Positions 17-32,760 are shown, counted from the stretch's first letter. The stretch is DNA of 35,853 nucleotides from Lenisia limosa (GCA_001655205.1 LPNZ01010012.1:1-35853); one strand, 5' to 3'. Made by a program: numbers and translations. Notes: generated from the sequence alone by a model not told the origin.

Positions 17-2437
17 GATCCAGCAGCTCGTTTTCGGATATCTCAATGTGCGTAACTTGCCCGAAGAAGTCGTGAACGTCATCGCCGACAAGTCCAATGG
101 CAACCCCTACTACGCCCACGAGCTTGCGCTTGACATGAAGCAGAGCGGTGTGCTGACTATTAATGAGGCTGACCAGTCCGCTGAGCTCAGCGAAACCGCC
201 GGCGACCTTGAGGAGACTGATTTACCTTCTTCACTGCAGGGCGTAATTTCTAGTCGAATTGATCAACTGAGCGCTTCCACTCTGCTAACCCTCAAAATCT
301 GCTCGACCTTCGACCAATACGTGGGTTTTAGCTTTGTATGGATTATGTTGCCTTCTTCATTTCACTGATACATTTACTAAAGTTCTGGGTGCACGCTTAA
401 ATGTCTTCTGTAGCACCTCTTCCAACCGCCGTGACTGCTTACACCCTAGATTGACACTGATATTCTCTCTGCCGTGTACCCTGTCAAGGGTGTCACACTC
501 GATCAGCTGCTTGCAGATCTCAAGATCCTCGTCAAGGTGAGTTGCGGTGGGAGCTGGGGTTCCCGTTAACCTCATTTCATCCGCATCATAACAGGTCACC
601 AAATTGTGCTGGAAGTATTTATGAGGTATTTTGCACCTTATTATGTGATATGATGTCGCACGTGACATTGCCAGACAAGCTTCATTGAAGAAGTCGAAGG
701 AGGAGAAACCCCCTACAGTGTTTCCGAGAACAACCACAGATACAGATTCTCCCATACTCTTACCGTGAGTCTTTTGACCTTTCACTTTTTCATTGTCAAA
801 AAATACATATTCTGACCCCCCAGGTAAACGTTGTCTACAACCTGCTTCTCCGTAAGCATAGACAGGAAATCCACGAGGCCATTGCGCTCTATCTTGACGA
901 GGCTATTCCGATTGAGAGGCGGACGGAGCTTGATGTTCTTATTCCCCTTGCCAGGCACTGGTGGGACTGGACTAGTCTTAAAGTTGATTCTTACTATGAA
1001 TTCCGGCTTTGGCCAGCTACAACCTTGTTTTATTTCTCATCTCTGTATATATTATGTATAATATCATATCAATGCTATTAAAGGCAAACACCTTGTCAAC
1101 TCACATACATAGGGGCGAGACTAATGACGACGTAAAGGGCTGTCACTACAATGAGAAGCTTGCGTACACCCTGGTTAAGGTGGGCCCTTTCATGACTGCG
1201 AGATGGGATATTTCAAGTGCTTGATTTATAGTTGAAGGCTTATTGCTAATGGTCTAGGTCCACGACTATTCCAATGCCATTTCTGCTGGTTCCCGTGTGT
1301 TTGAGATCATTGAAGAAACTGACAGCAAACTTGACCTCTACCGACGAGGCAAGGTTGGATGGATCAAAAATCTGGAATTTTATATGTACCTAATGCTCTC
1401 ACTGTTGTTTGGAGGGTTCGAGCTTCCGTGTTCCTGTACTGACCCCCCCCCCCCCCNNNNNNNNNNNNNNNNNNNNNNNNNNNNNNNNNNNNNNNNNNNN
1501 NNNNNNNNNNNNNNNNNNNNNNNNNNNNNNNNNNNNNNNNNNNNNNNNNAAGGAGTTGAGCAAGACTTATCTCACTCGTGCCTTGGAGGTAAACAGGATT
1601 CCTTTTGGTTCTTTTTTTTTTTTTTGCTCTTTTGCATTCCTAAAATATTGACCGGCTATTCTTTTGCTACAATATTGACTGGTCATCCTTTTGCGACAAT
1701 ATTGACCGCCATCCTTTTGCTACAATATTGACCACCAGTCATTTGGAGAACCTTCTTCAGTGACAAACCCTCGGCAACATGTTTTGCGGCAGATGTGCTA
1801 CAAAGCTGAAGTAGTGGCGCGAAAGACGCGCAAGGACGTCAACAACAAGCGCAAAATGATTCTGCCTGCCCTCCTTGCGGCGACCGGCGGTGACGGCGAG
1901 ACAATTGCGGACACCTCAGATGTCGAGGGTTTGTCATTGAATGTTACCCCCTATTATGATCATCTTTGTCTTGTTTTGTTCTGTTTAGTAACTCAATATT
2001 ATTTTCCAGTTATGATTGTTTAGTTATGATGGACGATGATGAAGACGTCTGCTTTGCACCGGATGATCTTAAGCAGCCACCCCCGGCGGCGTAGGCATGG
2101 CCATCTTTTTAATTCAACATGTCACATACCATTGCTCTACCCTACTTCAGTTTCTATGGTAAAACCAAATCATACCTATCTTAGAACAATCCGGCCCGAC
2201 CTAATTTCCTCAGAGAAACACCGCAACGAGTGCGTTCGAGAACAAATACTGCGCGTCCGCGTAGCCAAACACGTTCAGCCTCCACCTCCAGTACTCAACA
2301 AGGTACTTTTACCCTCAGCGGAAACGTGTTCTTTTTCCAGAGATAGAGTGCTTACCTTTGTAGCTCCAGTAGAGCCTATGATTGTGGAGGAACCACCTAA
2401 AGAGGAGAAGAAGGGAGGATGCTGTGTTGTCATGTAG
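17..2437 (+). CDS. 5'-partial multi-exon ADCY10 (soluble adenylyl cyclase)-like STAND NTPase/winged-helix/TPR protein, C-terminal half, ending in CaaX
   Basis: Spliced reading: ..IADKSNGNPYYAHELALDMKQSG..LPSSLQGVISSRIDQLSASTLLTLKICSTFDQY|IDTDILSAVYP..|..YRFSHTLT|VNVVYNLLLRKHRQEIHEAIALYL..LARHW|..|..PPKEEKKGGCCVVM*. The GNP, ISSRIDQL and YRFSH motifs are typical of ADCY10/MalT-type STAND proteins. The cyclase and P-loop would lie upstream of the window; one exon is in a gap. Confidence 0.75.
1644..1738 (+). repeat. Degenerate intronic tandem repeat (units 27, 27, 26 nt plus a partial unit) ending at the 3' splice site
   Basis: AATATTGACC..CTTTTGC(T/G)AC starts at 1644, 1671, 1698 and 1724. 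The last partial copy ends in the acceptor AG at 1737-1738. Confidence 0.9.
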
Positions 2438-10113: not shown

Positions 10114-12112
10114 ATGGCCACAAAGAAGGATCAACAGTTTCAAAGTGACCTCCAGGCGGTTTTAGACTACCTGAACACAGTAAGAGGCTATTTATCCTGT
10201 CTTTCTAACTATTTCAGTGTAATAGACCCCATTCCACGCAGTCACTTGTCGACTCAATGCATGGGAAAATCAAGAAGACTCAAATGCAGAAATGCCTTGA
10301 TTGTAAGTCTTCTACTCCCTTCTCTCAAAAATACTTGTAAATCTGGTGTAAATATTCATTTGGAATCACTGAAACGCCTGTTCTTATTTTTCTGTCAGCT
10401 CTTGTCGTTGACCAGAAAATCATCCTCAAAGAGTGGGGCAAGTCCAAGATCTATGCCTGTCGACAGGTAAGCCACGGTTCTAGGAGTACTTGCAAGTTTA
10501 AGAAAATTATCTTCTGTCACCTCTTTTTATTAAGGATGGCTTACAATCATTATTCTATCAGAGCAAATCTGTTTTTTTTTTCTTTAGCTCTATCTTTGCC
10601 AAGTGATTAAGTCATTCCACACTCAGTCCTAACTGCCTAGGACCAATTTCCTAAAGTCGCTCCTGAGCAGATGGCATCTATTGATGAGGTTGGTGTATTC
10701 ACATTAGGGTAGTCATTTAATAAGAGAGGCGGATTGTGTATCACTAACCTCAACAGACAATAAAGAAGGTAGCTGAAGAGGCATCCCGAATTGCTAAAGA
10801 AGTAGCTGTACTTAAAACTGGTGAGCATGGAGTAAAGGTCCCAATAGATACTGAGAAAGTGGGAAGGGAATTGTTACGATTGGTTGGATATTCCTGAGTA
10901 AGCTGATTTCCTCAGAGTTCCAACAGCTCACTGCCAAGCCTGTTTTGGAGAACCTCAAAAGCCTGATGGAAGATCTGCGCAAAGAAGTGGGTAAAATGGT
11001 CCCCCGAGAACCATTGAATATCATAAAACGGAGGGGAGAGTGTGTTCTTCTGAAGTGGATAAATCAGTACATTTCAGCAAATATCATTGTTTATACATTT
11101 TCGCTTTGACTATTGATTTTCAAAGAGAAGATGTATATTAACCACATAATATGAAGCCCCCCATTATATTACTTACAATTCCTTACATCGTATTTTTCTG
11201 ATATTTCAGCTTGATACAAAGACAGAGTCCCTAAAAGACCTTCGAGAGAATGCAACCGTTATTTCTGTGGGAAGGGGATCGTATTTGAGAAACACTTTGA
11301 GAATTTAAATTTGTTTTTTTTTATCTCCTTGAGAAAAAAGAGTGGGCATTGAGGTTTTTGGGATTATATATAATTACATATCATATAATATTAGCATATA
11401 ATAAACGAAATAGACAGGTTTCTTTTTCTTTTTAAAAGACTATTGTCAGGTGTACTGTGTAAATCTCTAACTACTCAGGATGAAGACCAAGTAAATGTTA
11501 AAACTAAGCTGAAGAACAATGTTGTAAGTGGGAATTTTTCATCTATTTCGATCCTTTTCTTTTAAAAATACTATTCTCACGTATTAGGCTGCCTGGAGGA
11601 AAAGAAAGCGCACTGTTTGTGGGCAATAAGAGAGCTATCAAATTCATGTGCATATTGGGTTGTTCTTTCTTTATAATGAACTTATTCTACATTCAATCCT
11701 CTTACATGTACCACAGGGGGAACGAGTTGTGGATAGCTTATACGATATCATATGATCACATATTACTTTGTTTTTTTTTGTTTTTTTTTATGTTGCGCTT
11801 AAGTTGGGGTTTTGATGATTCATTTTTCGGAATAGTACCTGAGGCAGGATTCCCCAAATTTCTTGCGTTTTACCTCCACACAGGTCAACGACATGGTTGG
11901 AGCTATTTCAGAAGCCTCAGGGAAGAGGCCAAGAGAGCTTCATGTTGGGGGATTAGGCGACATGAGGATTGTGATGATTTGGTTGCGGCTTTTTGGAGCC
12001 CCGTATCCACTATCTTGGCTGGTGTCTGACCGAGCAGGAGGACATTGGTATTGAGACAGATGAAGAAGCTAAGGTTGACTTAAAGGAGTGTGACAGTCTT
12101 TTGAAGAAGTGA
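10114..12112 (+). CDS. HOP2: Hop2/TBPIP meiotic recombination factor (winged helix + coiled coil)
   Basis: Spliced: MATKKDQQFQSDLQAVLDYLNT|CNRPHSTQSLVDSMHGKIKKTQMQKCLD|..IILKEWGKSKIYACRQ|DQFPKV..|..|AAWRKRKRT|VNDMVGAISEASGKRPRELH|EDIGIETDEEAKVDLKECDSLLKK*. Matches the Hop2 motifs YL..NRP, K.wGK.KIY..Q, WrKRKR and GiEtDE. Confidence 0.9.
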
Positions 12113-12505
12113 TGTGGTTAATGTTTGGTTGTTTAGTTTCTTTTGACTGAAGAGAGGTCTGATTGTTGTTATTTATTGTACTTGTCTTTCTCTTCTTCCT
12201 TGATATAATCGAATCTCCCTGGAGATGGGTGTGATCTTCACTGCATAGGAATTTGATGTGGTCCCCTTTTGTCTTCATTATCACTTTTATTACCTTCTGT
12301 CTCTTCCCTGAGGCTTCTCAAATTGGAACGAAGCACTTGACAATGCATAGAAGATCATGTTATTTTTTCATTTTTTTTCTACATTCAATGATAATTGGGA
12401 ACACTAGATGTGGATGTGATTATTTGGCAGGGAGTCCGACAAAATTGGAAAAGAAATTAATGAACTAGCAACAATACAAGAAACAAACAAAACGTTGAAA
12501 AAAAA

Positions 12506-13928
12506 CTAAAGAACACGCATGATGTAGATGGCGTGATATGTGGGAGGAAGATGCTCAGTCTATAAAGGTAAGAAGAAGGTACGTCAGTCACACTAGATTT
12601 ATGGTAAAGCCACGTAGCCTCAAAAATTGCGCAGATGAATGCAAACAATGCATCAAAACAACATTCGGATAAAATGACTCCCAAAGTTTGTAATGTAATA
12701 TGACATAAACACTATCTATCTTCTGTCTTCCATCAGGTCCTAAAAATGCCATCATAAAAGCCGTTTATTACCCTCCCCCCCTCGCACCGGATCAGATTCC
12801 AGAACCTTCTGAGGTTCAGCAGTCGTTGTGCCGTTGAAATCAGTGACGTTGAGGCGCATGGCGTGGGTGTGGCCGCCGTTGTTACTAAAGAGTCAGATGG
12901 GACACAATACAAAAAACAATGAAGGAAAAGGGACTTACTCAGTATCAATGTACTTCATGGACTTGTCACGAATTCTGAAAGACAGCGGAAAATATCCCTA
13001 CAAGCAATAGTTACATGATATGACATTTTGGTCCTTTTTTGTACAATTGTGAAAGCCCCCCCACAGAGCCACCTGCGTTGACACCATTGATCCAGTTAAT
13101 GAGTCGAGAGTATTCATTACTGAACTTAGTTGCGGTGACATAGCTGTACCTGGGGAAATGAACTTTGAAAAAAAACCTTCAAAAAAAACAGTTCTAGCTT
13201 GTAGAATATCTGTTGAAACCAGTTAGTAGGTTTATCCAACCCTTTTACCAATCGCAAAGACTGTTGACGATGGTGGTATGGAAGTGGTCATCGACTTCGT
13301 TAGTTTCCATCTCTTGATCAGGGTGTGAGTGAGAATAGCTGAAAGGTGACATACACGACTACTGAGAGCAATAAGAAACATGGGGCCAGTGAAGAATGAA
13401 AAAAAGTAGAAACGGAAGTTCACTCACTCATGCTCGTGTTCCTTAATGGTGTATTCGTGGGTATGCTCAGTCTTGACAGCGCGTTGCCCGGCAGTGGTCA
13501 CATCACCACCCATAGGGTATACGTCACGAAGGTCTGGGATGACTTGGCCATGATACTCACTGCAGTCATGTTAAGACTGAAGAAAAAAGCCAAAACAATC
13601 ATCATATCTGCGCTTCACCTCAATTTATATTGAAATTGTAAATAATATACCAAAATCCTCCAAAAGAAAAGTAAATGAAGGAGAACCCCTGCCCTTGCTA
13701 CCTTGAAGGCATGTTCAGCACGAGACCGTTGCAAATCGCCCATCCGGTGGGTGGTTCACTCTCAAATGTTGACGGCGTCCACGCCACTATCGCTCCGAGG
13801 GGGGGAACTGCGGCGTTAATGGAATAAAGGGCGAAAATGAAAATAGTGTAGCCCCCCCCCCCACGAAGAGTGTCAATTCTTGTGCCGTTTTCCCGGACTT
13901 CTCCCTTGAGAGATGCAGTACAGCCAAC
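12506..13928 (-). CDS. Phage tail-collar domain protein with HxH-repeat fibre; at least 8 exons; start codon probably in the gap 13929-13999 or upstream
   Basis: Phase-consistent exons 13928-13865, 13807-13702, 13559-13428, 13338-13249, an exon from 13149, 12974-12939, 12884-12788, 12559-12506. They give LPPLGAIVAWTPSTFESEPPTGWAICNG..IPDLRDVYPMGG..TEHTHEYTIKEHEHDYSHSH..DDHFH..NNGGHTH..TEHLPPTYHAIYIMRVL*. The junction after the 13149 exon is ambiguous. Confidence 0.85.
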
Positions 13929-14379
13929 NNNNNNNNNNNNNNNNNNNNNNNNNNNNNNNNNNNNNNNNNNNNNNNNNNNNNNNNNNNNNNNNNNNNNNNA
14001 ATTTCGATAAAATATTAAACGGGGAACAACCACACGAAACTGTTGTGAACACATGGTTGCATCAAGAAAGAAAAAACTCTAAATTCTAGAGCAATTCTCG
14101 GAAACAGAAAACAGTAGCCCAGCGATTAGTGTTTTTAAACCAACAACAATAATAATAAACTGGATAAAAGCATGTAATGCATTGAATAATAATGCAAAAG
14201 AAGGACTGAACAAAACTGAAAAAAAATAAAGAAGAACTGGGTGACCATGACTAAACTATCAAGCGTATCTTTCCAGCGTAAAAGAATCAAGAAAATAGTA
14301 CTATTAGACAATGAAATAACACAATATTATTGGAAGAAGAGGATTTGAACAAGGTACTGGAAATTAAGCTTATCAAGTA

Positions 14380-17300
14380 ATGTGTCAGAACTCAAAGAGT
14401 GGAGAAGCCGGCTCACCAAAGTTCATGCTGTCATCTTCCTCAAAAACTATTGACTTTCCGAAGACGGAAGCGACAAGAAGAAGCCCCAAAAGTCCTAAAA
14501 GGCGCATATTTGGAACTGCTCTTGACAATGCGGTATTTTCAGTTTGATAACAAAAGACTCAAAGACGCAACGACTCAAACTGTTTATAAATGGTTACAAA
14601 ACGGGACAAACGGACGGCAACGGCAGCAATGGCGCAATGGCTGGCCGACATAAATCAATAATATTCTGGGGTTGCATATGGAAAATTCTTATCATGGCCA
14701 AGTCATCCTAGACCTTCTCAAATTCTTATTTAGTATTATTTAATCATGGAAAGCTAATCGTAAATCCTTGGTTGACCAGTTTTGGATTATATTTTGTCTT
14801 TGTGGGCGAAATGTGGGGTAGCTCCTATCATAATCATGAAGCTGATGGCTATAAATTCCATATTGCTAAGCTAGAAGCCGAAAAAAAGGTTGGTCTAATT
14901 TTTTCTTTGTCTTCTAGTGGTCTTCTTCATCTTCCAGGCTTTGCAACAACATTTAAATGTTGCTAATCGTCAGAATAGAGATTTAAAACAGTCAATTTTT
15001 GAGATATCGCAGCAATACTCGAAGGCAACAGCTTCGCTGGGTGTCAAGCCAGAGCCTCTTAAAATTGAAAACTGTAAGCCTTTTGGAGCTATGTGTTTGA
15101 TTTTGCTTTTTTAAGTATCTTACTCTATAGTGTTGAAGGAATTAGACAATGTCACACCAGAGGTCAGGGAAATTGCTGTTTCTGCCGGTGGGAATGTGGA
15201 CTTCTGTCATATTTGATTATTTGCCCATAGGGAGAGAAGAGGAATGCAGGAGGTTCTTTGGCAATACATTATCGATATGATATGATTTATGATACAAAAT
15301 TTATTGTATATATGTGACATATTACACTCAATATCATATACAACCGTGTTAAGTCTTGTCTGTTGGTCAAGTCTTACCACAGTCACTGTATAGATAGTTT
15401 ATGTATTAATTTGATTAGAGCTTGACGATGATGAGAACCGTGATTCAAGGATCTTCTATTTGAAGCATACTTTCAAGGTTTGACAGGAAGCCGTCCGATC
15501 AGTGAATTTTTCTCCTAGGAGTGGCGTTTGAATGTTCTCACCACACCAGAGCGTTGTTTTACAGTATTAGGGACACAGCTCAGCGGCTTACCACAGTTCA
15601 TTCAATCGCAACGGCTCGCTTTTGGCTTCATGCTCCATGGACAAAACCGTCAGAATATGGGATGTTCGCAATCGCAAAGAAGTGAGGCTTGATTTACATC
15701 TTCAATGGATGCTGACAATGTAGAAATACACCTTGACTGGACATAATCTGACAGTTAGTGATGCTGCCTTCGCTTCAAACAGTGAAATGGTTGGTAGTAA
15801 AAAGTGAAATATTAGTGAACAGGTAAATTGAGCTATTTAGCTTTAAAAGCAAAATGTGTAGGATTTTGACCAGAGAATTAAGTTTCCATTTCACTTTGTT
15901 TTATTTTCTTCAGACCGGTAAGAATCGAGTTATACAGATTTTTATTGTTTTCACCCCCCCCCTCCCCAAAGTAGTTGGACTGTTAAGGCTGTTTTGGGTT
16001 ATTTATTTATGTTAGTGTTTTTTTTTAATTCGGTCATATTTCTGCATTCAATGTTTAGTGTTTATGTTTGTGTTTGGAGTTTTGTATTATTGATTTGTGA
16101 TAAGTGCTTCACTCCAGCTCGGTTCGGTTATAACCGAAACCGACAAATAATTTTCCATTTATCCGAACCAAACCGATAATCATCGTATTTTACAAAACTA
16201 ATAATAACTGAAACGAACGGATAACGGAACCGATAACCGACATATAACCGACATTTACCACCCCTTTTGCAATTGAGAAACATACTTGTATTTCTTACCC
16301 TCTCCCCCTCAGATGACAACAGGTAGTTACGATCGCACCGTTCGATTGTGGCAACTTGGAGAACGTGCCGGGGACCAAGTTGGGCTGGTGGCATTCATTG
16401 CAAAGGAATCTCAATATTTAAAACAGATATGAAATAGTTTTGCATTAGAATATGCAGCATTATTTGATCACTCTTCATTACCCTTTAGTTACGAATCTTA
16501 CGAGCCTCTTTCACCTCACCTGGGTGCTTTCTTTGTGAATTCCTGTATTTTGTCATTCATAACATGTTAAGATTTGCTCATCACAAGTGGAAGGCTTTGT
16601 GCAGGCAGTCAGTTTCTCCCCAACCTGTTTGGGGTGTCTCTATCTTCCGGATTTTCGTGCCACTACTTTTCTCGACTTCGATATATCTGACCTAAAAAAA
16701 ACCCTTGTCTCGCTGCTTCATCTGTATTCACATCATCCATTCTTACACTAAAGCGAACGAGCTGTATTATGCGGGTACAACGGCAGGTAACATTGAGTGT
16801 TTTGACACACGGCATGGACCAAAACAGGTCAACACCATTGCCATCGGTGCCATGTGTAACACTTTGTGAGTGATGTTAAAATATCTTAAATTGACTCGTT
16901 GCACCTCCTTTTTTGTTATCTTGTTTTGAAATAACTTATCTGCTTCTCAATGATTCTAAATTAAGCTTTTCTTTCTATTCTTGAAATCAATATTTCTGTG
17001 TCATTTCATACGCAATTAACCAGGTAGTCACATGTACAACAATGGTGTGCTTGTTATCTGTGGTGACTCGGAAGGCTGCATACAAACATTTGATTCTCGA
17101 AAGACGAACACTTGTCTTGTCAGATTCCAGGTGGCAAATAAGGACGCTCTTTCCAACTTGGTAACCTCTACACCATCCGCTGGTGGGTTGGATTTGCCTC
17201 TCTTACCTGAAAGAACTTAATTTGTCAATTATTTTTTAAAAAAAAACTGATCATATTTGTCATTTAATTGGTCAATTAATTGCCAAGTTCTACGAATAGG

Positions 17301-18114: not shown

Positions 18115-18346
18115 GCCATGGTTTTCTGGGTGGGGGGGGGGGGGNNNNNNNNNNNNNNNNNNNNNNNNNNNNNNNNNNNNNNNNNNNNNNNNNNNNNNNN
18201 NNNNNNNNNNNNNNNNNNNNNNNNNNNAATGTAGTTGTTGTACAGTTCAATGTGGTCCTCGGATAATCCCAAGCATTTCGCCATCATTTTTCCAAGTTTA
18301 GCTAAAATGGGTAATAGAGTTTCTATCCCAAGACAAAAACCTTAAT

Positions 18347-20982: not shown

Positions 20983-23900
20983 ATGCATAGAACGCGACAA
21001 CCCCGTAGTGGCGATACATATGGACCTAATAATGGATTTGAACCAAGATCATCGAAGAGTACTCATGGATCTAGCCAGGGCAGTCGAGGGCAAAGTCGCC
21101 CAATGTCTCTCTCTGAAGCTGCGGCTTTCACCCCTTCTCAGTCTGCAAACAGAAGAAGATACCACCACAGCACTCCCAGTGCCAATATGTCACCTTCACG
21201 ATACTCCTCTTCGCCACAACAGCAAGAACCAAGCTATGACTATTCGACATACTACGAGTCGGTCTCGCCCGTCCACCAGAACTATGCTTCGTCGGAAGAA
21301 GAAGCCTACCCCAGTTTTCAGCCCCAACGCCATGAGGCACGACCTGAACCGCTCCGTCGAGATGAGTTCGGTGGGTCATCTCGATTTGCCCCCGTCCCCG
21401 ACCATGTCCGAATGATTTCGCCAAGCCGAAGAACCAGGAGCCAGAGGCAATTCGACGACCGCGACCGAGCAATGCCTCCTGTTGCACGTGAGCGTGAAAG
21501 AGAGCGGCCGAGAGAGCGAGATGACAGACAAGTGCGGCAGCAGCCACGTTCGGTAGCCAGACCGGCGCGTCAGTCTGAGATCCGAGGCCAACAGCCCTTG
21601 AGACAATCCAGACCCATTCGACCAAGTAGAAACAGGCCAATCAATAAGCCAAGTGGACCTCCCTATACTTTCAAGGTTTGTCTCATCCAAGTTTTGGAGA
21701 GTTGCATCTGAATTGTTATTTTTCCATTGCACTTTTTTTTTTTCACAGAGAATAATCCTAAAATTGACAAAGGTTAAAGAACTGTAGCAATAATAATAAA
21801 GCTTTCTCTTGGATATTTCTGAATTTTAGTCTGACGGCCAAGCAACAAGGTTCCAAGATTTGGTGTCTTCGAGGGATAGTGTTGTCGAATTATTCCATCA
21901 AGGTTGGTGAAGGATTGATGTTGACAATTTTGGTTTGAAAGGTTAATGAATCTAGCTCTTGCGGACCTCTTTGAAGAATCCAGATGGCCCCGAGACCCTT
22001 TCCCGTGGGTGGATGTTTGATAGATGTCATATTGGTCAAAACTGAGATACTTGTTAAAATGTTATGCGTCCTGTAAGGTTTCATGATATAATATTTATTG
22101 TTTTTCAACAAATACCTTTTTTAGTTTGACAAAAATAATGAATTTGAAGGTAATGATTTTTTTGTAATATAAAAAAATCCTTGTTTCTTGATATCAAATA
22201 CTCTTATCGTATTATGGTTTTATTTACAATAATTCAAACGATTTTCACATGTTACACTTTTAGAAAAAAACAAGTCCAACAAATAATCATCGTTTCATTT
22301 CCAGCTTTTGTTATTGGGATTCAAAGAGAACCTGTGACTGTCAGAAAATGGACATTTTTATTTTGAGTTGTTCTCGATGACGTCCTTTTGAAGCGTAGTT
22401 GACCTTTCAAGGTACCTTCGAGAGAAACTTGGTCTTGGTAAACGAACAGACGAGGAATTGGATCTTGAAATGGCCAATAACGATCTTGCTGATGAAATTG
22501 AAGTTGCCCAATGGAAAGTTGACGAACTTGAAGCCCAGGTTTGTTGAAGAGAAGTTATGATTTATGTTAACTGTAGCTTTTGTGTGTGTTTTTTTTTTCA
22601 TTTTGGTCATAATTGATGGTTATTCCCTGCTCACAGAACAGATTCTTGAGATTGAAAGACAGCGCAACTATGAGCGGTCACAGGTCCAAGACGAAATGGC
22701 CCAGGCTAGGTCTTCTGCCGTATTAGCTGCATTCTCTGGGGAGGTCACTGGAGACCAGGAGACAAACCCTGCCCTCTACGCGAGCGCCAGCGCCATTGCT
22801 GCTGCTCTCGGCTCGGCTGCTCTTTCAGTTCGGAGGGAACCCCGCGCTCGCATGTCGGAGCGGACCTCTCGTCGGCCTGTTGTTGCAACACCGGCCGCGC
22901 CAGCCGCTCCACAGAGAACACCAGAGGAAATTCGAGCCATGTCGGAGCGATTATCCCAAAGACGTCAGAACCCCGAGCCTGTGCGAAGAGTGAGGTGGTT
23001 GTGAATGATTACTTGAAGGAGGGGACGTTGGAGATGGCTTTGTTTGATTCTGTTAACTTGTCAGGGTGCGTCAACTCGTACAACAAGTACTTCAAGACCA
23101 AGTCAAGGGAGAGCTTCAAACCGAACACAGCAAAGGAGCACTCCAGCCAAGGTTTGGTTTGAAAGTGCGGCATCTGTTTCCCTTCAAAAATACTCTTTTA
23201 TTAAGAAAAACGCCAATTAGTCCTTGATCATTCAGTCATCTACAAGATCCTCAGGCACGTCACAAGCCTCAGAAGATGACGTAAGTCGAGATGAGGAAAT
23301 GAAAACGTCTCAGCCAGAGCCGATGTCAAAACACGAACTGGAGTGCTCTACCCAGGGTGAGAAGAGTGATGCTGAGGTTAAGGAAGAAAGCAAAGAGCAA
23401 GGCAAGAGTGATGAAGAAAAGGATGAAGGAAAAATCGAAGAAAAGGATGATAACAGTGAAGTAAAGTCTGAGGAAGAGAAGAAAAAGGAAGAGGAAACAG
23501 AGAACGAGAATACAGTAGAGAAAGAGGTGGGAAAAGAGGAGAAGGTAGAAGAAGAGGAGAATGAAGAGAAGGTAGAAGCTATAGAAGAGAAGAAAACTGA
23601 AGAGCAAGTGACAAAGTCAGATTCAGCAGAGGATTTGGAGAAAAAGAAGGCATTAGCTAAGAGACAAGAAAAAAAAAAAAAAGAAGANNNNNNNNNNNNN
23701 NNNNNNNNNNNNNNNNNNNNNNNNNNNNNNNNNNNNNNNNNNAAAGAAGAAGAAAGGAAGAAGAAGATTGCTGATCAAAAAAGGAAAGAAGAAACAAGGA
23801 AGAAAATTGAGCAAAAGAAAAAGATTGACGATGAAAAGAAGAAAGAAGAAGAGTTGAAGAAGAAGGAAGAGGAGAAGGAAAACAATAAAAAGGATAAGGA

Positions 23901-24987
23901 GAAGAGAGCAGCTTTTGCTGAAAAAAAGAAGAAGGATGAAGAAAAGAAACAGTTGGAAATGGTAGAGAAGAATAAGAAAGAGCAAGAAGAAAAGAAGAAG
24001 AAGGAAGAAGAAGAAAAGAAGATGGAAATGAGAGAAAAGAAGAAAAAGGAGGAGGGAGAGAAAAAGAAGAAGGAAGATGAAAAGAAAGAGGGTGAGGAAG
24101 AGGAAGCAAAAAAGAAAGAGGAAGTTATGAAGGAAGAAGAGGAAAAGAAGAAGCAAGAAGAAAAGAAGAAGGAAGAAGAGAAGAAGAAGGAAGAAGAAAA
24201 GAAGAAAGAAGAAGAAAAGAAGAAGGAAGAAGAGAAGAAGAAGGAGGAAGAAATGAAGAAGGAAGAAGAACCGAAAAAGGAAGAAGAAAAGAAGGAGGAG
24301 GAAGAAGAAAAGAAACAGAAAGAAGAGGAAGAGAAGAAAAAGGCTGAAGATGTAAGCAAAGAGGAAGGAAAGAAGGAAGAAGTAAAGGAGGAAGATAAGC
24401 CTTGTGAAGAAGCTAAATCAGATGAACCCCAATCTCAGCTGAGGTGTGTGAGTCGCAATATAATCTGACAGTTATGATCAAGTTCACAATTTAACACGTG
24501 TAGCGAACAGCCGGCCCCAGTTCGTTCCCATAGTCTTGCCTACATCAACATACCAAATGACTTCGGCGAGCTTCAAGGAGCCACTAAGATGGCTTTGGCG
24601 GCAGGTATGTCCCAGTATTGGTTCTTTTGCTTTTTTATTTTTTTTTTATCATAAAAACTACTACATATTTAAATGATATGATATTATTATCACCAATTCT
24701 ATCGTACTGTGTATTTGATAAATAATATCCACGAACGTTGTTCACCATGCAGCAAACGCGGCTTTGGCTGAAGAAGACCAGGCCCTTTCTGCTGCTTCTC
24801 TGCAAAAAGAGAAAATCTTTCTCCATGTTGGAGGGTTTTTTCGCTGTTTCGAAGAGGTTCTTATTTACGCTTCCAGAAAGGCTTGGCGGCATTCAAACAA
24901 ATGCGCACAGATGGGGCTCCTGATACCCAGGTTAACTTTGTGAAAGGACAACTTGGCATTGTCCATGCTAAGTGGGAGCTTGGTTAA
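20983..24987 (+). CDS. Large low-complexity protein: Arg/Ser/Pro-rich N-terminus, MYCBP/AMY-1-like module, long Glu/Lys-rich region, helical C-terminal domain
   Basis: Long open exons (20983-21676, 23236-24448) joined by short GT-AG exons. Internal SDGQATRFQDLVSSRDSVVELFHQALADLFEESRWPRDPFPYLREKLGLG..; terminal ..KGLAAFKQMRTDGAPDTQVNFVKGQLGIVHAKWELG*. Confidence 0.75.
24140..24300 (+). repeat. Coding tandem repeat (KKKEEE)n, ~18-nt unit
   Basis: Translation reads KKKQEEKKKEEEKKKEEEKKKEEEKKKEEEKKKEEEMKKEEE. Confidence 0.9.
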
Positions 24988-25384: not shown

Positions 25385-27884
25385 TTAGAATTGTTTACCC
25401 AGGTCGATCTTCGCACGCAAGCTGTTGATACTATAGAAGACAAAGCTGTCCAAAATACCCATGACAGCAAAAACTCCTCCAAGAATTGCGAAAAGTTCTA
25501 AAAGGTGAAAATGAAAACAGTACATCAAGCACTATGACTGCAAGGGCATGAGTTAGAAATTCCTCCAGCAAACCAGTGATGAAGTGAAGGAAGGAGCGAG
25601 AGGTTTCTACCATTGTCACCTTATAAGGCGCAAGGTCATAGACAAAGAAAACGCCTGGGTGATGAATGCGATCAAGTCTGTCACATTTATATATGATATG
25701 CTCTGATATAATAAACTATATGCATATCATATGGCATTCCTTTCTATTGTTCAGCTACCTTCAGTCCATCAATCAGGAAGAATTCGCAGAAGCCCTACCA
25801 GGAAGTGAATTTCCTTGAGTTTTGACAGAAGAGGAAGTGTAGGAGTATTGGTTGGTTTCAATGACATCTCGACGGCCACTGGGATTTATGAAAAAGGCAA
25901 CAAAAAAAACAATCTCTCTCATGACGATATTAGTGGAAGAGAGAAGATATAGAGTGGACAATATATGTAGCTCCCCACAAACTGATGATACTCAGTCGGA
26001 ACAACCTTTAAGAAGTATTTGTACATCATGTTGCCTAGGGAGTGAGGAGCAGTTTATATCTTTCCGAATCAAAACCAACGTCCAATACCATACCAGTTGG
26101 AGAAGACACCTTATGGTTATCCAGAGGGTACTCTTGGTTCGGGTACTCCTTGCCGAAGGAAAGATGGTCAATGGTATGTGTGAAGTTGAAGACTGAGTGG
26201 TCAGTGCTGTTAAAACGCAGAAAAAAAAAGAAGAAAAAAAACTCAGTGAATATCGTAGCAGGCCTATTTCTTTCCACTCCATGGAAAGTTGTCAGGTGCC
26301 GAGAGATATTTTGATTGGCTTTATCACATATAATATGTGGAAATGCGGGAAAAATAAAACATGTGAATGCTCGTCGCCATCCACAACATCACGCTTCAAA
26401 GCTATTGGATTATAATTAGCTTCCTTTCAGTCCCAAAAAGAATTTCTCAATAAATCCTTGATAAATATTGATATTTTACCGGTCTTTTTAGACCGTACGG
26501 AAGCACTAATTATAGAATTTTAATTCAAAAACAATACTATTAGTGTCAATTTTTGCCTCGAAAAGACTCATACCTTCACCGTGGAACATGCTCATGTCAT
26601 GAGTGTGCCCGCGTCCAGACATGAAGGACTTTCCAGGGGCAATGTGGAAGGTACCTTGGACTTTATTCACCTGGGAAGCGAGTGAATATTGAATCTCATA
26701 AATTACAAACAGACCCAGAGTATGACTATAACGGACGAGGTGGGGGGGGGGGGGNNNNNNNNNNNNNNNNNNNNNNNNNNNNNNNNNNNNNNNNNNNNNN
26801 NNNNNNNNNNNNNNNNNNNNNNNNNNNNNNNNNNNNNNNNNNNNNNNNNNNNGACATGATTGCAGTGCTGAGTCCAAGAAAAACAAACCTCAAAGAAGCC
26901 ATAAAGATGGCAGCCCTCATGACGATGACGCTCCATATCAGGTGAATAGCCATCATCACTATAAAAGTAATAGAGGACAATATACTATCAACAATCCACA
27001 TTGCTATCACGCCATACCTGCACTGTTCAATGCTGGTTCCGAGGGTGAAGGCCCATCCTTTCCTGCGGTAGGCGGCACGCACCTCATTACACGTGTTGCA
27101 GCACTCATTATCATCCATTTCCGCTCCGTAGCAACTAAAAAGTAAAAGAGTCTTGATAGTGAAACAATAATTCAAGGGCTACCCCCCCCCCCACGATCCA
27201 CAATAGGCACCAGGCTTGGGGATGGGGGCGCCTCCTGGGGCCTTTCCCTCAGTTTCTGACTCCTTATTCATGTCGTCAAAGAGCTTTTGGGTGTACAGCT
27301 CTTGAGGGTAAGCAGAAGCTCACAATACGGAATAAAACGAAAAAGATTCACCCCTCCCCCGCACCAGAGTTGACAACGGCAGCGCCAAGGGGACGGCCAC
27401 GACGGTCAAGGCGACGACGATAGATGGAGTGGAACACGTCCATCTGGGTCTCTCCAGTCACATCCATCGCGTCAATGGAAAGATCTATTTTAATTACATT
27501 GTCAAAGAAAAAGCCGGTGCTTACAGACACAAGGAACTTTGGGGAAAATCATATTCATATTGATACGAACAGTCTGGTTTCCTGATCCAACGTCGACATC
27601 AATGGATTTCTTGACGATAGGTTGCATAAAGAGATAGAACTCTCCAAAAAACAGGTAAGTCATGAAGAGAAAGGCACATACAGAGACTAAAATGGTTAAA
27701 GCATTTCCAAGAAAGAGGACCCAGGTTATTACCTTTCCTGAATTAAATGCCTCCATCCCTCTTACCAACTGCCCCACTGAAGGTCTTCTCTTTGAAGTCT
27801 TCCAAAGTTTTGGGGAAAAGATCAATCTGTATAATAAGCTGTGGTTGTGCAATATTTTGATATTACCTGGCTAAGGAGCCCCAT
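25385..27884 (-). CDS. ERGIC3: ERGIC3/Erv46 ER-Golgi intermediate compartment cargo-recycling protein
   Basis: Motifs: DLFPKTLEDFKEKTFSGAV; SCYGAEMDDNECCNTCNEVRAAYRRKGWAF..IEQC; EGCHLYGFFEV; NKVQGTFHIAPGKSF; HLSFGKEYPNQEYPLD; PGVFFVYDLAPYKVTMVETSRSFLHFIT; AILGGVFAVMGILDSFVF..KIDLGKQF*. Confidence 0.93.
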
Positions 27885-30576: not shown

Positions 30577-32760
30577 CTAATTGTGTGGTACCCACAGACC
30601 GGTCCACTGCACAGTTGCTTCCAAAACAGCATCAATAAGAAAAGGACCTTCAGGTTTACGGATGATAGGTGGCTCTAATTCATAAAACAACCTCAAAGGT
30701 AGATTGGGTTCGCAAACCTTTATGTAGCATTTTCTTTAATCCTTTAGGTGCAATTCTTTTCCACGAGGATAATGTCTCTTCTTGGTTTATATGGAAACTA
30801 TACCAAATTAAAATGTGAAATTGTCATAAAGAAGATATCATATTTAATGATCATATCATGTGGTCTCTTGTTACTCCCTCAATATATCAAATAGTATATA
30901 GTATCTGGTTTCGGATAAAAATAACACATGAGAGAAATCGAGAAGAGTTTGTCGAATTATGTCTTTTTATCAGTCCGCAGGAAATCACAACTTATGATTG
31001 ATATGATTGGTATATTATATAATTCGAACATAAAGAAAATATGAGACCTGCTTGTCTGGATCTATTGTATATAGTACAAATATATGATATATATTATTTA
31101 CATATCATATATATATTATATATCATAAGTAAATAGCATCATGAACTATGATATGGGTGGTATTTAATTAAGAATTGTAATCTAAAAATACCAAGGAACA
31201 AGTTTTTTTTTTTCACTAGTAAAGTAATTCAATGATTTTGGGTCCTCATTAACCTTATATATTTCCAACCTTCTTTGCATGTACTCTTCCATGGTGAAGA
31301 CCTTAGAGACACCAATTAATCCAGAAGGAATCCAAGCTCTTTTTTTTCTGAATAAAAATAAAATCTGTCACAATACCACATTACTTTTGATAATAAAAAT
31401 GAATGGGAGTAATGGGAAAGAGATTACAAACTCACGATTTCTTACGGCCACCTTCATTTTCAATTCTTGAATGTTCCTCAGCCTCCTGGTAATTACCAAG
31501 AACTAAATCATAGTCCTCTTCATGTTCCTAAATTGTAAACCTTTAAGAATAAGAAGAGAAAGGCAATTCAAAAAAAAACGGAAATGTCACTGCAAGATAA
31601 ACATACCATTTTCACGCCAATTACTCGAGGGTTCAAACGGGGTCCAAGGAGGCCTGAAAAGGTAAAGAATGGATGAAAAATTAAAGGTTAAATAAAATAA
31701 TTTCGTTTCATTTACCGCATGTTCTACGCACATTGCTTCCATTTTTCCTCAATATCAACATTTCACACTACGGATATTAAAGGCTCGTCCCTTTCAAGGG
31801 CCTCAATAGTTTCAGAACAAAGAATTGAGGATATGGGTACACAGATCACAGAAGTAAATCAACGTGTGTGTGTGAGCAACATGCTATCAGTTTGATACAG
31901 GATAAAAGGATATAATACACACAAAATGCGCGTACTGAGAGGCTTTGCATAATCCACTTATTGACGCGTCCAAAACCATTCCAATTAGAGTTGTGAAAAC
32001 CTCTCACCATCATCATTTTCACTTGATGAATCGTTCCCACTGAAATCCATGCGTACAACAGGTTTACCAACTGTGAGTCCTAAAAGGCATTTAGATTGGT
32101 AGGGATGAATAGAAATATGCCAAACGTTTGATAAGGAATGGAAGGAAACATCCCTCCAAACCTCCAGATGTATGAAGTGGGTCAATACTCAAATGCCTTG
32201 CGTCAATTCTTTGCTGCTTGGGCTTTCGTTTGAATTGCTGTCTCAGTCTCTTCTTAACAGGGGGGTTCTTTTTTTGTTGTTCTCGCGAGGTTGGAAAGAA
32301 GTCACACATTCGCCGCTGCATTGTATCCTTGGTTGAGTAAACAGCTGAAACTGTTCTATAATTATAGTCCCAATATCTCTACCCTAAACTTTCAACTAAC
32401 TTCTTTCCGAAAAAAAAAATGTCGAGGGGGGGGGGGGAGGGANNNNNNNNNNNNNNNNNNNNNNNNNNNNNNNNNNNNNNNNNNNNNNNNNNNNNNNNNN
32501 NNNNNNNNNNNNNNNNNNNNNNNNNNNNNNNNNNNNNNNNNNCACAAGTGAACCACAAGCAAGAGAGGAGTTTAGTTTTGGGGAATCTTCAGAATGTAAC
32601 CTTTGATGGAACTGTGGATTGTACACGATCTCAAATGAGAGTCAAATCACTGGCTTCCATTGAAGGCATGTGCAAAGCCCCGGTCATACGACCGCAAACA
32701 GATGCAAGAATCTATTGTCGCTGTAACACTCGAAACAAGGTTAACATACAATGCCAAGCT
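30577..32760 (-). CDS. Hypothetical multi-exon protein; boundaries uncertain, spans a gap
   Basis: Exon-like blocks: QRRMCDFFPTSREQQKKNPPVKKRLRQQFKRKPKQQRIDAR; GLTVGKPVVRMDFSGNDSSSENDD; AWIPSGLIGVSKVFTMEEYMQRR; ETLSSWKRIAPKGLKKMLHK; EPPIIRKPEGPFLIDAVLEATVQWTGLWVPHN*. It may be more than one gene. Confidence 0.45.

What the first reader, a model, noticed from the sequence alone, without database searches (positions are those of the whole stretch)
12506..13928. Intron-containing eukaryotic gene encoding a phage tail-collar / tail-fibre protein
The spliced product has the collar signature P.GAIVAW..P.GWAICNG..PDLR..PMG and the closing motif HLPP.Y.AIYIMR. These are typical of phage short tail fibres and bacterial tail-collar ('microcystin-dependent') proteins. 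The gene has at least 7 spliceosomal introns like those of its neighbours and sits between Hop2 and a WD40 gene, with no other viral genes nearby. This argues against contamination or a fresh provirus. Inference: a horizontally acquired, domesticated receptor-binding fibre, possibly used for prey or bacterial recognition, adhesion or defence. This is the best candidate for an undescribed system here.
Basis: partly seen in the sequence, partly recalled or inferred. Interest (0 to 1): 0.85.

Follow-up and report, generated by a model that had tools for sequence, protein, structure and literature searches.

The report
Phage tail-fibre tip gene in a protist
A nuclear gene of the anaerobic protist Lenisia limosa, with eight introns and a secretion signal, encodes the receptor-binding tip of a bacteriophage tail fibre; it may be a captured viral part that the protist now uses to recognise bacteria.

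Summary
On the minus strand lies a nine-exon gene. A 901-nt intronless cDNA-type contig (L045) matches it at 100% in nine blocks, and every visible intron is GT-AG. Its 262-aa product (P0001) is a EukProt transcript ORF of the breviate Lenisia limosa.

The finding's range holds exons 2-9. Exon 1, with the ATG and signal peptide, lies at 14507-14417, beyond an assembly gap.

Pfam Collar is below threshold (14 vs 24 bits). The homology is still solid:
- PHROG 'tail collar fiber protein' E=6.6e-9 over residues 57-260.
- A profile of 68 relatives built without P0001 scores it 77 bits; shuffles reach 4.9 at most.
- The family profile hits T4 gp12 and gp37 tips in the PDB.

All 87 relatives found come from metagenomes or bacteria. 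The five whose contigs I inspected sit in phage-like gene modules. The neighbours here are cellular: Hop2, WD40, ERV, DEAD-box.

Best reading: an old horizontal acquisition, now a secreted, probably trimeric, HxH metal-stabilised fibre tip without a shaft. A role in binding bacteria (prey or the Arcobacter epibiont) is inference only. I rate it a new variant of a known kind.

The parts
14417..14607 (-). Exon 1. It holds the 5' UTR (14607-14508, at least) and the start of the CDS (ATG at 14507-14505; residues 1-30 plus one base). It encodes the signal peptide (about residues 1-17).
   Evidence: cDNA contig L045 nt 1-191 matches at 100%. The translation equals P0001 residues 1-30. The donor GT follows at 14416-14415.
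13929..14416 (-). Intron 1, including the assembly gap 13929-13999. The gap hides the acceptor and the first 11 nt of exon 2.
   Evidence: L045 nt 192-202 have no match in the window, and the next block starts at the gap edge 13928. The N run was located.
13865..13928 (-). Exon 2, visible part. It encodes the linker between the signal peptide and the collar (residues 35-55).
   Evidence: L045 nt 203-266 match at 100%. GT follows at 13864.
13702..13807 (-). Exon 3. It encodes the first half of the collar domain. The homology to phage fibres begins at the start of this exon (residue ~56).
   Evidence: L045 nt 267-372 match at 100%. This piece hits Pfam Collar profile positions 1-24. The exon alone gives tblastn hits to tail-fibre genes of phages.
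13428..13559 (-). Exon 4. It encodes the second half of the collar (to residue ~115, window ~13487) and the first two HxH motifs (residues 123-125 and 132-134).
   Evidence: L045 nt 373-504 match at 100%. An exhaustive search with this exon found only P0001. H132 and H134 fall in columns that are 97-99% His in the relatives.
13249..13338 (-). Exon 5. It encodes HxH motifs 3 and 4 (residues 138-140 and 153-155) and the start of the lineage-specific 'head' segment.
   Evidence: L045 nt 505-594 match at 100%. H153 and H155 fall in columns that are 91-93% His.
13065..13149 (-). Exon 6, part of the head/tip segment (residues ~156-215). This segment has no detectable similarity to any relative.
   Evidence: L045 nt 595-679 match at 100%. 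The region is unaligned and below pLDDT 50.
12939..12997 (-). Exon 7, the continuation of the head/tip segment.
   Evidence: L045 nt 680-738 match at 100%. The true 6/7 junction is 13065|12997, not my first hand-made guess.
12788..12884 (-). Exon 8. It encodes the fifth HxH motif (residues 218-220) and two N-x-T sequons.
   Evidence: L045 nt 739-835 match at 100%.
12494..12559 (-). Exon 9. It encodes the C-terminal closing strand (residues 246-262), followed by the stop at 12508-12506 and at least 12 nt of 3' UTR.
   Evidence: L045 nt 836-901 match at 100%. The closing motif aligns with the C-terminal ends of the relatives' open frames and of gp12. pLDDT is 85-90.
14690..14717 (+). A 28-nt inverted copy (27/28 identical) of the start of exon 4. 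It lies about 85 nt upstream of the cDNA's 5' end. Whether it belongs to the gene's regulation is unknown.
   Evidence: blastn E=1e-7. The similarity does not extend. The local score is 26, against a maximum of 17 in 200 shuffles.

Best explanation
This is a nuclear, spliced and expressed gene of the breviate Lenisia limosa. It descends from the C-terminal receptor-binding module of a bacteriophage-type tail fibre and was taken up by horizontal transfer long enough ago to look like a native gene.

Shown:
- Nine exons and eight introns, with 100% cDNA support.
- Cellular neighbours.
- Coding GC like the neighbouring genes.
- Significant profile homology over residues ~51-261 to phage tail-collar fibre proteins.
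- Retention of 25 of the family's 30 most conserved columns, including two conserved HxH pairs and the closing strand.
- No phage-type shaft: the N-terminal 55 residues are a hydrophobic signal-like leader (exon 1) plus an acidic linker (exon 2).

Inferred mechanism:
- The protein enters the secretory pathway and the leader is cut at about residue 17.
- Three chains intertwine as in T4 gp12 and gp37. The collar (residues 56-115) and the C-terminal strand (246-262) pack together at the base.
- An ascending segment with four HxH motifs and a descending segment with one form a short needle, held by metal ions that are each bound by six histidines.
- The lineage-specific segment 156-215 forms the distal head, which contacts a ligand.
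- The most likely ligand is a bacterial surface polysaccharide. The protein would then act as a soluble or coat-bound lectin or agglutinin, for catching prey bacteria or for holding the Arcobacter epibionts known for this protist.
For: Gene structure and expression: L045 matches at 100% in nine blocks; GT-AG at all visible junctions.

Organism: EukProt EP01086 Lenisia limosa.

Homology:
- phrog_1800 'tail collar fiber protein' E=6.6e-9, residues 57-260 against profile positions 390-544 of 545; phrog_5795 E=5e-8.
- Leave-out HMM 77 bits, or 35.8 bits with the search motif masked; shuffles at most 4.9.
- tblastn to cyanophage fibres over residues 56-261.
- Family profile against the PDB: 9nxk 7e-29, 9qgo 3e-27, gp12 1pdi/1ocy 1e-13 to 2e-12, gp37 tip 2xgf 8.5e-8.
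- Foldseek against BFVD: 12 hits at E<=1e-3, those with a name being tail-fibre, collar or MdpB proteins or an uncharacterised phage protein. The top PDB hits are gp12 and gp37, but only at E~0.01-0.03.

Conservation: 25 of 30 conserved columns are kept, against a mean of 89% and a minimum of 77% for family members. There are five HxH motifs.

HxH motifs bind iron in gp37: PMC11705849.

Model: the collar and the C-terminal strand are confident (pLDDT 77-91 and 85-90).

Phage context of the five relatives inspected.

Cellular neighbours.

Composition: CDS 50% GC (GC3 53%), against 48-54% in neighbouring coding pieces; introns 39% GC.

Arcobacter epibiont of Lenisia: PMC12453579.
Against: - Pfam Collar is below the gathering score (14 vs 24 bits) and NCBIfam gives nothing.
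- No single relative scores above 35 bits pairwise, so no donor can be named.
- The monomer model is poor overall (mean pLDDT 58.9). The needle and head are below 50, so trimer, metal sites and head fold are inferred by homology only.
- There is no membrane anchor or known cell-wall tether, so how a secreted tip would stay on the cell is open.
- The signal peptide was judged by eye, not with a predictor.
- There is no expression data across conditions and no second species, so selection could not be measured.
- All three records of the protein may stem from one culture.
Confidence: 0.6

Rival explanations
1. The gene reached the protist through a virus of eukaryotes (giant virus or virophage) that already carried a collar-domain fibre protein, not directly from a phage or bacterium. 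What remains is a single domesticated gene of an otherwise vanished viral insertion. This concerns the route, not the present function, and is compatible with the best explanation.
For: Collar-domain proteins occur in viruses of protists. Cafeteria roenbergensis virus and Orpheovirus proteins are among the Foldseek hits (E~4e-3). Virophage OLV18/19 and the DSLV2 tail proteins carry PF07484, and the DSLV2 proteins are proposed, from modelling, to bind cyanobacterial LPS.
Against: The best sequence and fold matches are to tailed-phage proteins. The five relatives inspected sit in phage-like modules. No other viral gene was seen next to the gene, and the four neighbours tested are cellular.
Confidence: 0.2
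2. The gene is a transcribed but functionless passenger. It would be a neutral relic of horizontal transfer whose open frame has merely not decayed yet.
For: Only one species and one copy are known. No relative was found in other eukaryotes in the searches run. No protein-level evidence was available here.
Against: An ORF intact across nine exons, eight introns and host-like composition point to a long residence, during which an unconstrained frame should have broken. It keeps 83% of the family's conserved columns, within the range of functional phage members. It has also gained a separate leader exon.
Confidence: 0.12
3. The protein is secreted and trimeric, but it is used for something other than binding bacteria. 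It could be a building block of the protist's own cell coat, or a metal-binding (iron or zinc) protein.
For: Five HxH motifs fall within 98 residues. Phage fibres with such motifs have been proposed as iron ligands (PMC11705849). The head segment is unlike any known receptor-binding head.
Against: In the phage members with known function, including gp12, gp37 and the Pa223 fibre, this module is a receptor-binding tip, and there the metal is structural.
Confidence: 0.07
4. The gene is contamination or a chimeric assembly: a phage or bacterial gene wrongly joined to a eukaryotic scaffold in a metagenome.
For: The window is a metagenome scaffold (ERZ3820729 NODE_215) with ten N gaps and poly-G/C artefacts at the gap edges.
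Against: Eight GT-AG introns are removed exactly in an independent cDNA-type contig and in the EukProt Trinity ORF. The relatives' reading frames checked are uninterrupted. Flanking genes on both sides are eukaryotic and lie on the same gap-free stretches.
Confidence: 0.01

Closest known systems
Bacteriophage T4 gp12 short tail fibre, C-terminal receptor-binding domain (PDB 1ocy, 1pdi, 5iv5); PHROG 1800 'tail collar fiber protein'
   Same: The order of parts is the same: collar motif, HxH-bearing segment, variable part, and a closing strand that ends the protein. phrog_1800 matches residues 57-260 at E=6.6e-9. The family profile hits 1pdi and 1ocy at 1e-13 to 2e-12, with the alignment running to the last residues. 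These are also the top Foldseek PDB hits, though weak.
   Different: gp12 is 527 aa, with a long N-terminal shaft anchored in the baseplate. The Lenisia protein has 55 N-terminal residues, which are a secretion leader and a linker. It is encoded in a eukaryotic nucleus with eight introns. Direct pairwise similarity is not significant.
Bacteriophage T4 gp37 long tail fibre tip (PDB 2xgf): collar, iron-binding needle, head
   Same: Both have a collar followed by repeated HxH motifs and a return of the chain to the collar. The family profile matches at E=8.5e-8 to 2.5e-8. HxH pairs bind iron in gp37 (PMC11705849).
   Different: There are five HxH motifs here, against the seven iron ions reported for gp37. 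The head segment is unrelated in sequence. The trimer and metals are not shown here.
Small (230-240 aa) fibre proteins of uncultured podophage-like contigs (P0002, P0003; loci L041-L043)
   Same: They are similar in size, and similarity runs over almost the whole mature protein (82-95% coverage, 23-25% identity). They share the same start and end motifs.
   Different: They sit in dense phage structural modules beside SU10-type adaptor and Peptidase_S74 genes. They have no introns and no signal peptide.
Tail fibres of Pseudomonas phage Pa223 (PDB 9nxk) and PDB 9qgo; Bizionia argentinensis C24 protein (PDB 6ov6)
   Same: These are the best solved-structure matches of the family profile: 7e-29, 3e-27 and 4e-18. 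C24 shows that stand-alone cellular versions of the module exist.
   Different: They come from a phage or a bacterium. Only 9nxk gives any direct hit to P0001, and it is not significant (E=0.96).
Collar-domain proteins of viruses of protists (virophage DSLV2 tail proteins and OLV18/19; Cafeteria roenbergensis virus E3T4R8; Orpheovirus)
   Same: They are phage-type collar modules working in a eukaryotic setting. The DSLV2 proteins are proposed, from modelling, to bind bacterial LPS. They give Foldseek matches at E~4e-3.
   Different: They are virion proteins of viruses, not host genes. No sequence comparison could be made here.
Secreted 'Phage Tail Collar Domain' protein listed for Plasmodiophora brassicae (191 aa, PMC9530463)
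   Same: It is a protist-encoded protein with a predicted secretion signal and a collar domain. So a eukaryotic collar-domain protein has been listed before.
   Different: It is known only as a table entry. It was not compared here, because it is a candidate effector of a crop pathogen and no tool fetches it. It did not appear among the profile hits, so a close relationship is unlikely.

Membership tests
Pfam PF07484 (Phage Tail Collar Domain) | Score at or above the curated gathering cut-off (24 bits) over the 57-position profile | tested here: not met
   14.0 bits, E=0.051, with only profile positions 1-24 matched. Exon 3 alone gives 15.1 bits. Several relatives pass (P0004 35.8 bits, P0028 31.2 bits), while others, including the closest full-length ones, also fail.
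Phage tail-fibre C-terminal collar/needle module (gp12/gp37 type; PHROG 1800) | Significant profile similarity over the whole module | tested here: met
   phrog_1800 E=6.6e-9, residues 57-260 against profile 390-544 of 545. A profile of 68 relatives without the query gives 77.1 bits over residues 51-261.
Phage tail-fibre C-terminal collar/needle module (gp12/gp37 type; PHROG 1800) | Conserved core positions, including the HxH pairs and the closing strand at the very C-terminus | tested here: met
   25 of 30 columns conserved at 80% or more are kept. H132, H134, H153 and H155 lie in columns that are 91-99% His. P250, P251, I258 and M259 are kept. The protein ends 3 residues after the motif, as the relatives do.
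Phage tail-fibre C-terminal collar/needle module (gp12/gp37 type; PHROG 1800) | Intertwined homotrimer with metal ions bound by HxH histidines | not testable with these tools
   Only a monomer could be predicted, and the needle and head are below pLDDT 50. No multimer or metal prediction was on hand.
Complete phage tail fibre | N-terminal shaft and virion or baseplate attachment region | tested here: not met
   Only 55 residues precede the collar: a hydrophobic leader and an acidic linker. The PHROG match covers only the last ~155 positions of a 545-position profile.
Horizontally acquired gene resident in a eukaryotic nucleus | Spliceosomal introns verified by transcript, and eukaryotic genes on both sides | tested here: met
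   Eight introns are removed in L045 at 100% identity. TBPIP/Hop2 lies downstream and WD40 upstream, with ERV and DEAD-box genes further on.
Horizontally acquired gene resident in a eukaryotic nucleus | Relatives confined to the donor domain, with the gene nested among them in a tree | tested here: inconclusive
   P0001 is the only eukaryote-sourced protein among 88 hits, and the only hit of its own word search and of the exon-4 exhaustive search. These searches would miss orthologues below roughly 40% identity, or outside 144-458 aa. No tree was built, because pairwise scores are at most 35 bits.
Provirus or endogenous viral element | Other viral genes adjacent | tested here: not met
   The neighbours tested are cellular. 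No ORF of 90 aa or more in the window looks viral on inspection. That list was not scanned exhaustively against viral profiles.

The most novel reading that the evidence does not exclude
The protist uses a captured phage receptor-binding tip as its own symbiont or prey receptor. The secreted trimer would recognise a surface glycan of the Arcobacter epibiont (or of food bacteria) and hold the bacteria on the cell. That would make a domesticated phage host-recognition part a determinant of a eukaryote-bacterium partnership.
Probability: 0.15. Interest if true: 0.85.

Novelty: new variant of a known kind. Interest (0 to 1): 0.6.

Why it matters
Phage receptor-binding proteins are highly specific binders of bacterial surfaces. 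A eukaryote that has kept one, fitted it with a secretion leader and eight introns, and expresses it would be a clean case of a viral host-recognition part reused by a cell that eats bacteria and lives with them.

Lenisia limosa is known for a hydrogen-based partnership with Arcobacter bacteria attached to its surface. How the partners recognise and hold each other is an open question. This gene is a concrete, testable candidate.

It also adds a well-documented case to the short list of phage-type structural genes in eukaryotic nuclei: exact exon map, cDNA support and cellular neighbours. No paper found here mentions it.

Tried and rejected
Searches with single exons:
- Pfam, the PDB and tblastn against phages gave only sub-threshold hits or none, because intron 3 splits the collar.
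- The search for homologous proteins with the 126-aa open frame around exon 3 found nothing.

Hand-made splice model:
- All junctions were right except one. To keep the frame open between exons 6 and 7 I chose a 40-nt GT-AG stretch myself.
- The cDNA later showed the real junction (13065|12997, a 67-nt intron). That guess was wrong.
- Its translation is still in /scratch/model2.fa.

Alignment A1 (P0001 plus 18 open frames from fetched loci):
- I did use it afterwards as the query of the search for homologous proteins, whose description accepts such sequences.
- The structure was then predicted from A2, which holds only proteins returned by the protein searches.

Other dead ends:
- P0001 alone against the PDB gave no significant hit, and NCBIfam gave none.
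- The search for related loci with A2 failed for lack of a conserved stretch. With P0001 it found only two remote bacterial loci in genome contigs, so no donor was identified.
- The Hamann et al. 2016 paper on Lenisia (PMC4900452) is not held.
- The 28-nt inverted copy upstream is not a decayed paralogue, because the similarity does not extend.

Full report
WHAT IS THERE

The finding lies on the minus strand. Three-frame translation shows pieces of a collar-type motif, several His-x-His motifs, and a closing motif followed by a stop at 12508-12506. The window has ten N gaps. One of them (13929-13999) abuts the upper end of the finding.

The window itself is a metagenome scaffold, ENA ERZ3820729 NODE_215.

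GENE STRUCTURE

An exhaustive HMMER search of 1.84 billion representatives with exon 4 alone (43 aa) found one protein, P0001. It is 262 aa and 100% identical over the exon. P0001 is a complete Trinity ORF of the breviate Lenisia limosa in EukProt (EP01086). It also sits on a 901-nt intronless contig of another ENA assembly, L045.

L045 aligns to the window at 100% identity in nine blocks:
- 14607-14417
- 13928-13865
- 13807-13702
- 13559-13428
- 13338-13249
- 13149-13065
- 12997-12939
- 12884-12788
- 12559-12494

Eleven nt of exon 2 fall in the N gap. Every visible intron starts with GT and ends with AG. Intron sizes are 57, 142, 89, 99, 67, 54 and 228 nt, plus intron 1, which holds the gap.

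Its range misses exon 1, which carries the ATG (14507) and the leader.

The neighbours are as stated. TBPIP/Hop2 lies downstream, above Pfam's cut-off. WD40 pieces lie upstream on the other strand. A COPII ERV gene and a DEAD-box helicase lie further on.

WHAT THE PROTEIN IS

The curated libraries alone are not convincing. Pfam Collar gives 14 bits against a cut-off of 24, matching only the first 24 of 57 positions. NCBIfam gives nothing. P0001 alone finds no solved structure.

Viral family profiles and custom profiles are clear:
- phrog_1800 'tail collar fiber protein' E=6.6e-9, with residues 57-260 on the last 155 positions of a 545-position profile; phrog_5795 E=5e-8.
- tblastn against phage genomes aligns residues 56-261 to fibre genes of Microcystis and Synechococcus phages at 24% identity. 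The best E is 4e-4, to a cyanophage tail-collar protein.
- Pattern scans gave 39 related loci in metagenomes and viral contigs, at 25-44% identity. The match lies in the C-terminal part of the open frame. In the full-length matches it runs to the stop, or to one codon before it.
- A profile search gave 87 further proteins. Many carry PF07484 or PF21939 (gp10 C-terminal domain), and some are named 'microcystin-dependent protein'.

A profile of 68 of these, built without P0001, scores P0001 77.1 bits over residues 51-261. With the eight residues that served as the scan pattern masked, it still scores 35.8 bits. Shuffled copies reach at most 4.9 bits.

The family profile hits several solved structures (similar):
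- Pseudomonas phage Pa223 fibre, 9nxk: 7e-29
- 9qgo: 3e-27
- Bizionia C24, 6ov6: 4e-18
- T4 gp12, 1pdi and 1ocy: 1e-13 to 2e-12
- T4 gp37 tip, 2xgf: 8.5e-8

An AlphaFold2 monomer model built on alignment A2 is confident only for the collar (pLDDT 77-91) and the last 13 residues (85-90), with a mean of 58.9. Foldseek with it gives 12 BFVD hits at E<=1e-3. Those that carry a name are tail-fibre, collar or MdpB proteins of phages, apart from one uncharacterised phage protein. Against the PDB, gp12 and gp37 come first, but only at E~0.01-0.03.

ANATOMY

- Residues 1-17 are a hydrophobic leader with small residues at -3 and -1. This was read from the sequence; no predictor was run.
- Residues 18-55 are an acidic linker. 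Both parts are encoded by exons 1-2.
- Phage homology starts at the first codon of exon 3.
- Residues 56-115 are the collar.
- Residues 116-155 carry four HxH motifs (123, 132, 138, 153).
- Residues 156-215 have no similarity to anything and are modelled with low confidence.
- Residues 216-245 carry a fifth HxH (218) and two N-x-T sequons.
- Residues 246-262 are the closing strand.

P0001 keeps 25 of the 30 columns that are at least 80% conserved in the relatives. That compares with a mean of 89% and a minimum of 77% for the relatives themselves. The kept columns include His 132, 134, 153 and 155.

In gp37 such HxH pairs bind iron ions (PMC11705849). That three chains together supply six histidines per ion is from my own knowledge of the gp37 structure.

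ORIGIN

P0001 is the only eukaryote-sourced protein among the hits. The five relatives whose contigs I inspected sit in dense phage-like modules, with SU10-type adaptor, Peptidase_S74 and endolysin-type genes. Only two remote loci turned up in 185,579 bacterial and archaeal genomes by pattern scan.

No relative scores above 35 bits pairwise, so the donor cannot be named.

The coding sequence has 50% GC (GC3 53%), like neighbouring coding pieces (48-54%). The introns have 39% GC, like the rest of the window.

Eight introns, host-like composition and a separate leader exon point to a long residence. Contamination is excluded by the spliced cDNA.

A route through a virus of protists remains open. 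Giant viruses and virophages carry collar proteins.

HOW IT LIKELY WORKS

Shown: the gene is spliced and expressed, and it encodes a fibre-tip homologue with a leader and no shaft.

Inferred, by homology with gp12 and gp37: secretion, trimerisation, a needle stabilised by metal at the HxH pairs, and a distal head made of residues 156-215 that binds a ligand.

More speculative: the ligand is a bacterial surface glycan, and the protein serves to catch prey or to hold the Arcobacter epibiont described for Lenisia.

COMPARISON AND NOVELTY

The protein works like, and is homologous to, the C-terminal receptor-binding module of gp12/gp37-type fibres. It is not a complete fibre, and it fails Pfam's own threshold for the Collar family.

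Eukaryotic collar-domain proteins are not unheard of: one appears in a secretome table for Plasmodiophora brassicae. I found no paper that mentions this gene or any breviate homologue.

I rate it a new variant of a known kind, of moderate to high interest.

LIMITS AND SLIPS

- The searches for eukaryotic relatives were limited by word filters, a length window and a short exon query.
- The trimer and metal sites could not be modelled.
- The key Lenisia paper is not held.
- One junction in my first hand-made splice model was a stretch I chose to keep the frame. It was wrong, was superseded by the cDNA, and is disclosed as a slip.
I disclose that too.

Noticed in passing
window 14690-14717 (+) versus 13555-13528 (-): A 28-nt inverted copy (27/28 identical) of the start of exon 4 lies about 85 nt upstream of the cDNA's 5' end, between this gene and the divergent WD40 gene. 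The similarity does not extend, so it is not a decayed paralogue. Its meaning (chance duplication, antisense pairing, shared element) is unknown.
   Followed up: partly
window 13852-13862, 13056-13062, 12775-12781; also 27182-27192: Three of the gene's eight introns begin with GT followed at once, or within five bases, by a run of 7-11 G on the sense strand. A near-identical 'CGT + G run' lies beside the ERV-like gene on the minus strand. Four of the window's twelve G/C runs of 7 or more fall in this 1.4-kb gene. This may be a feature of Lenisia introns, or partly a sequencing artefact.
   Followed up: partly
window 1443-1456, 18132-18144, 26742-26754, 32426-32437 and window start 1-14: Poly-G/C runs of 12-14 bases abut the N gaps or lie within a few bases of them, and one sits at the scaffold end. 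They look like assembly or sequencer artefacts, so bases next to gaps should not be trusted.
   Followed up: no
window 23224-24468 (+): A 414-aa open frame made almost entirely of Lys/Glu repeats coincides with the strong GC and AT skew at 23-25 kb. It is a low-complexity coding or repeat region of unknown role.
   Followed up: no
loci L041-L043 (relatives P0002, P0003): The closest full-length relatives share a conserved five-gene order in uncultured phage contigs: a 52-aa gene, a SU10-type adaptor, a 512-aa protein, the 230-235-aa fibre, and a 100-aa protein. In the longer contigs a Peptidase_S74 protein follows. The small downstream gene could be a fibre assembly helper. The Lenisia gene has no such partner nearby.
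   Followed up: no
window 10114-12112 (+), Hop2/TBPIP gene: The neighbouring Hop2 gene also has many short introns (about 47 nt upward), so the fibre-tip gene looks as intron-dense as its native neighbour.
   Followed up: partly
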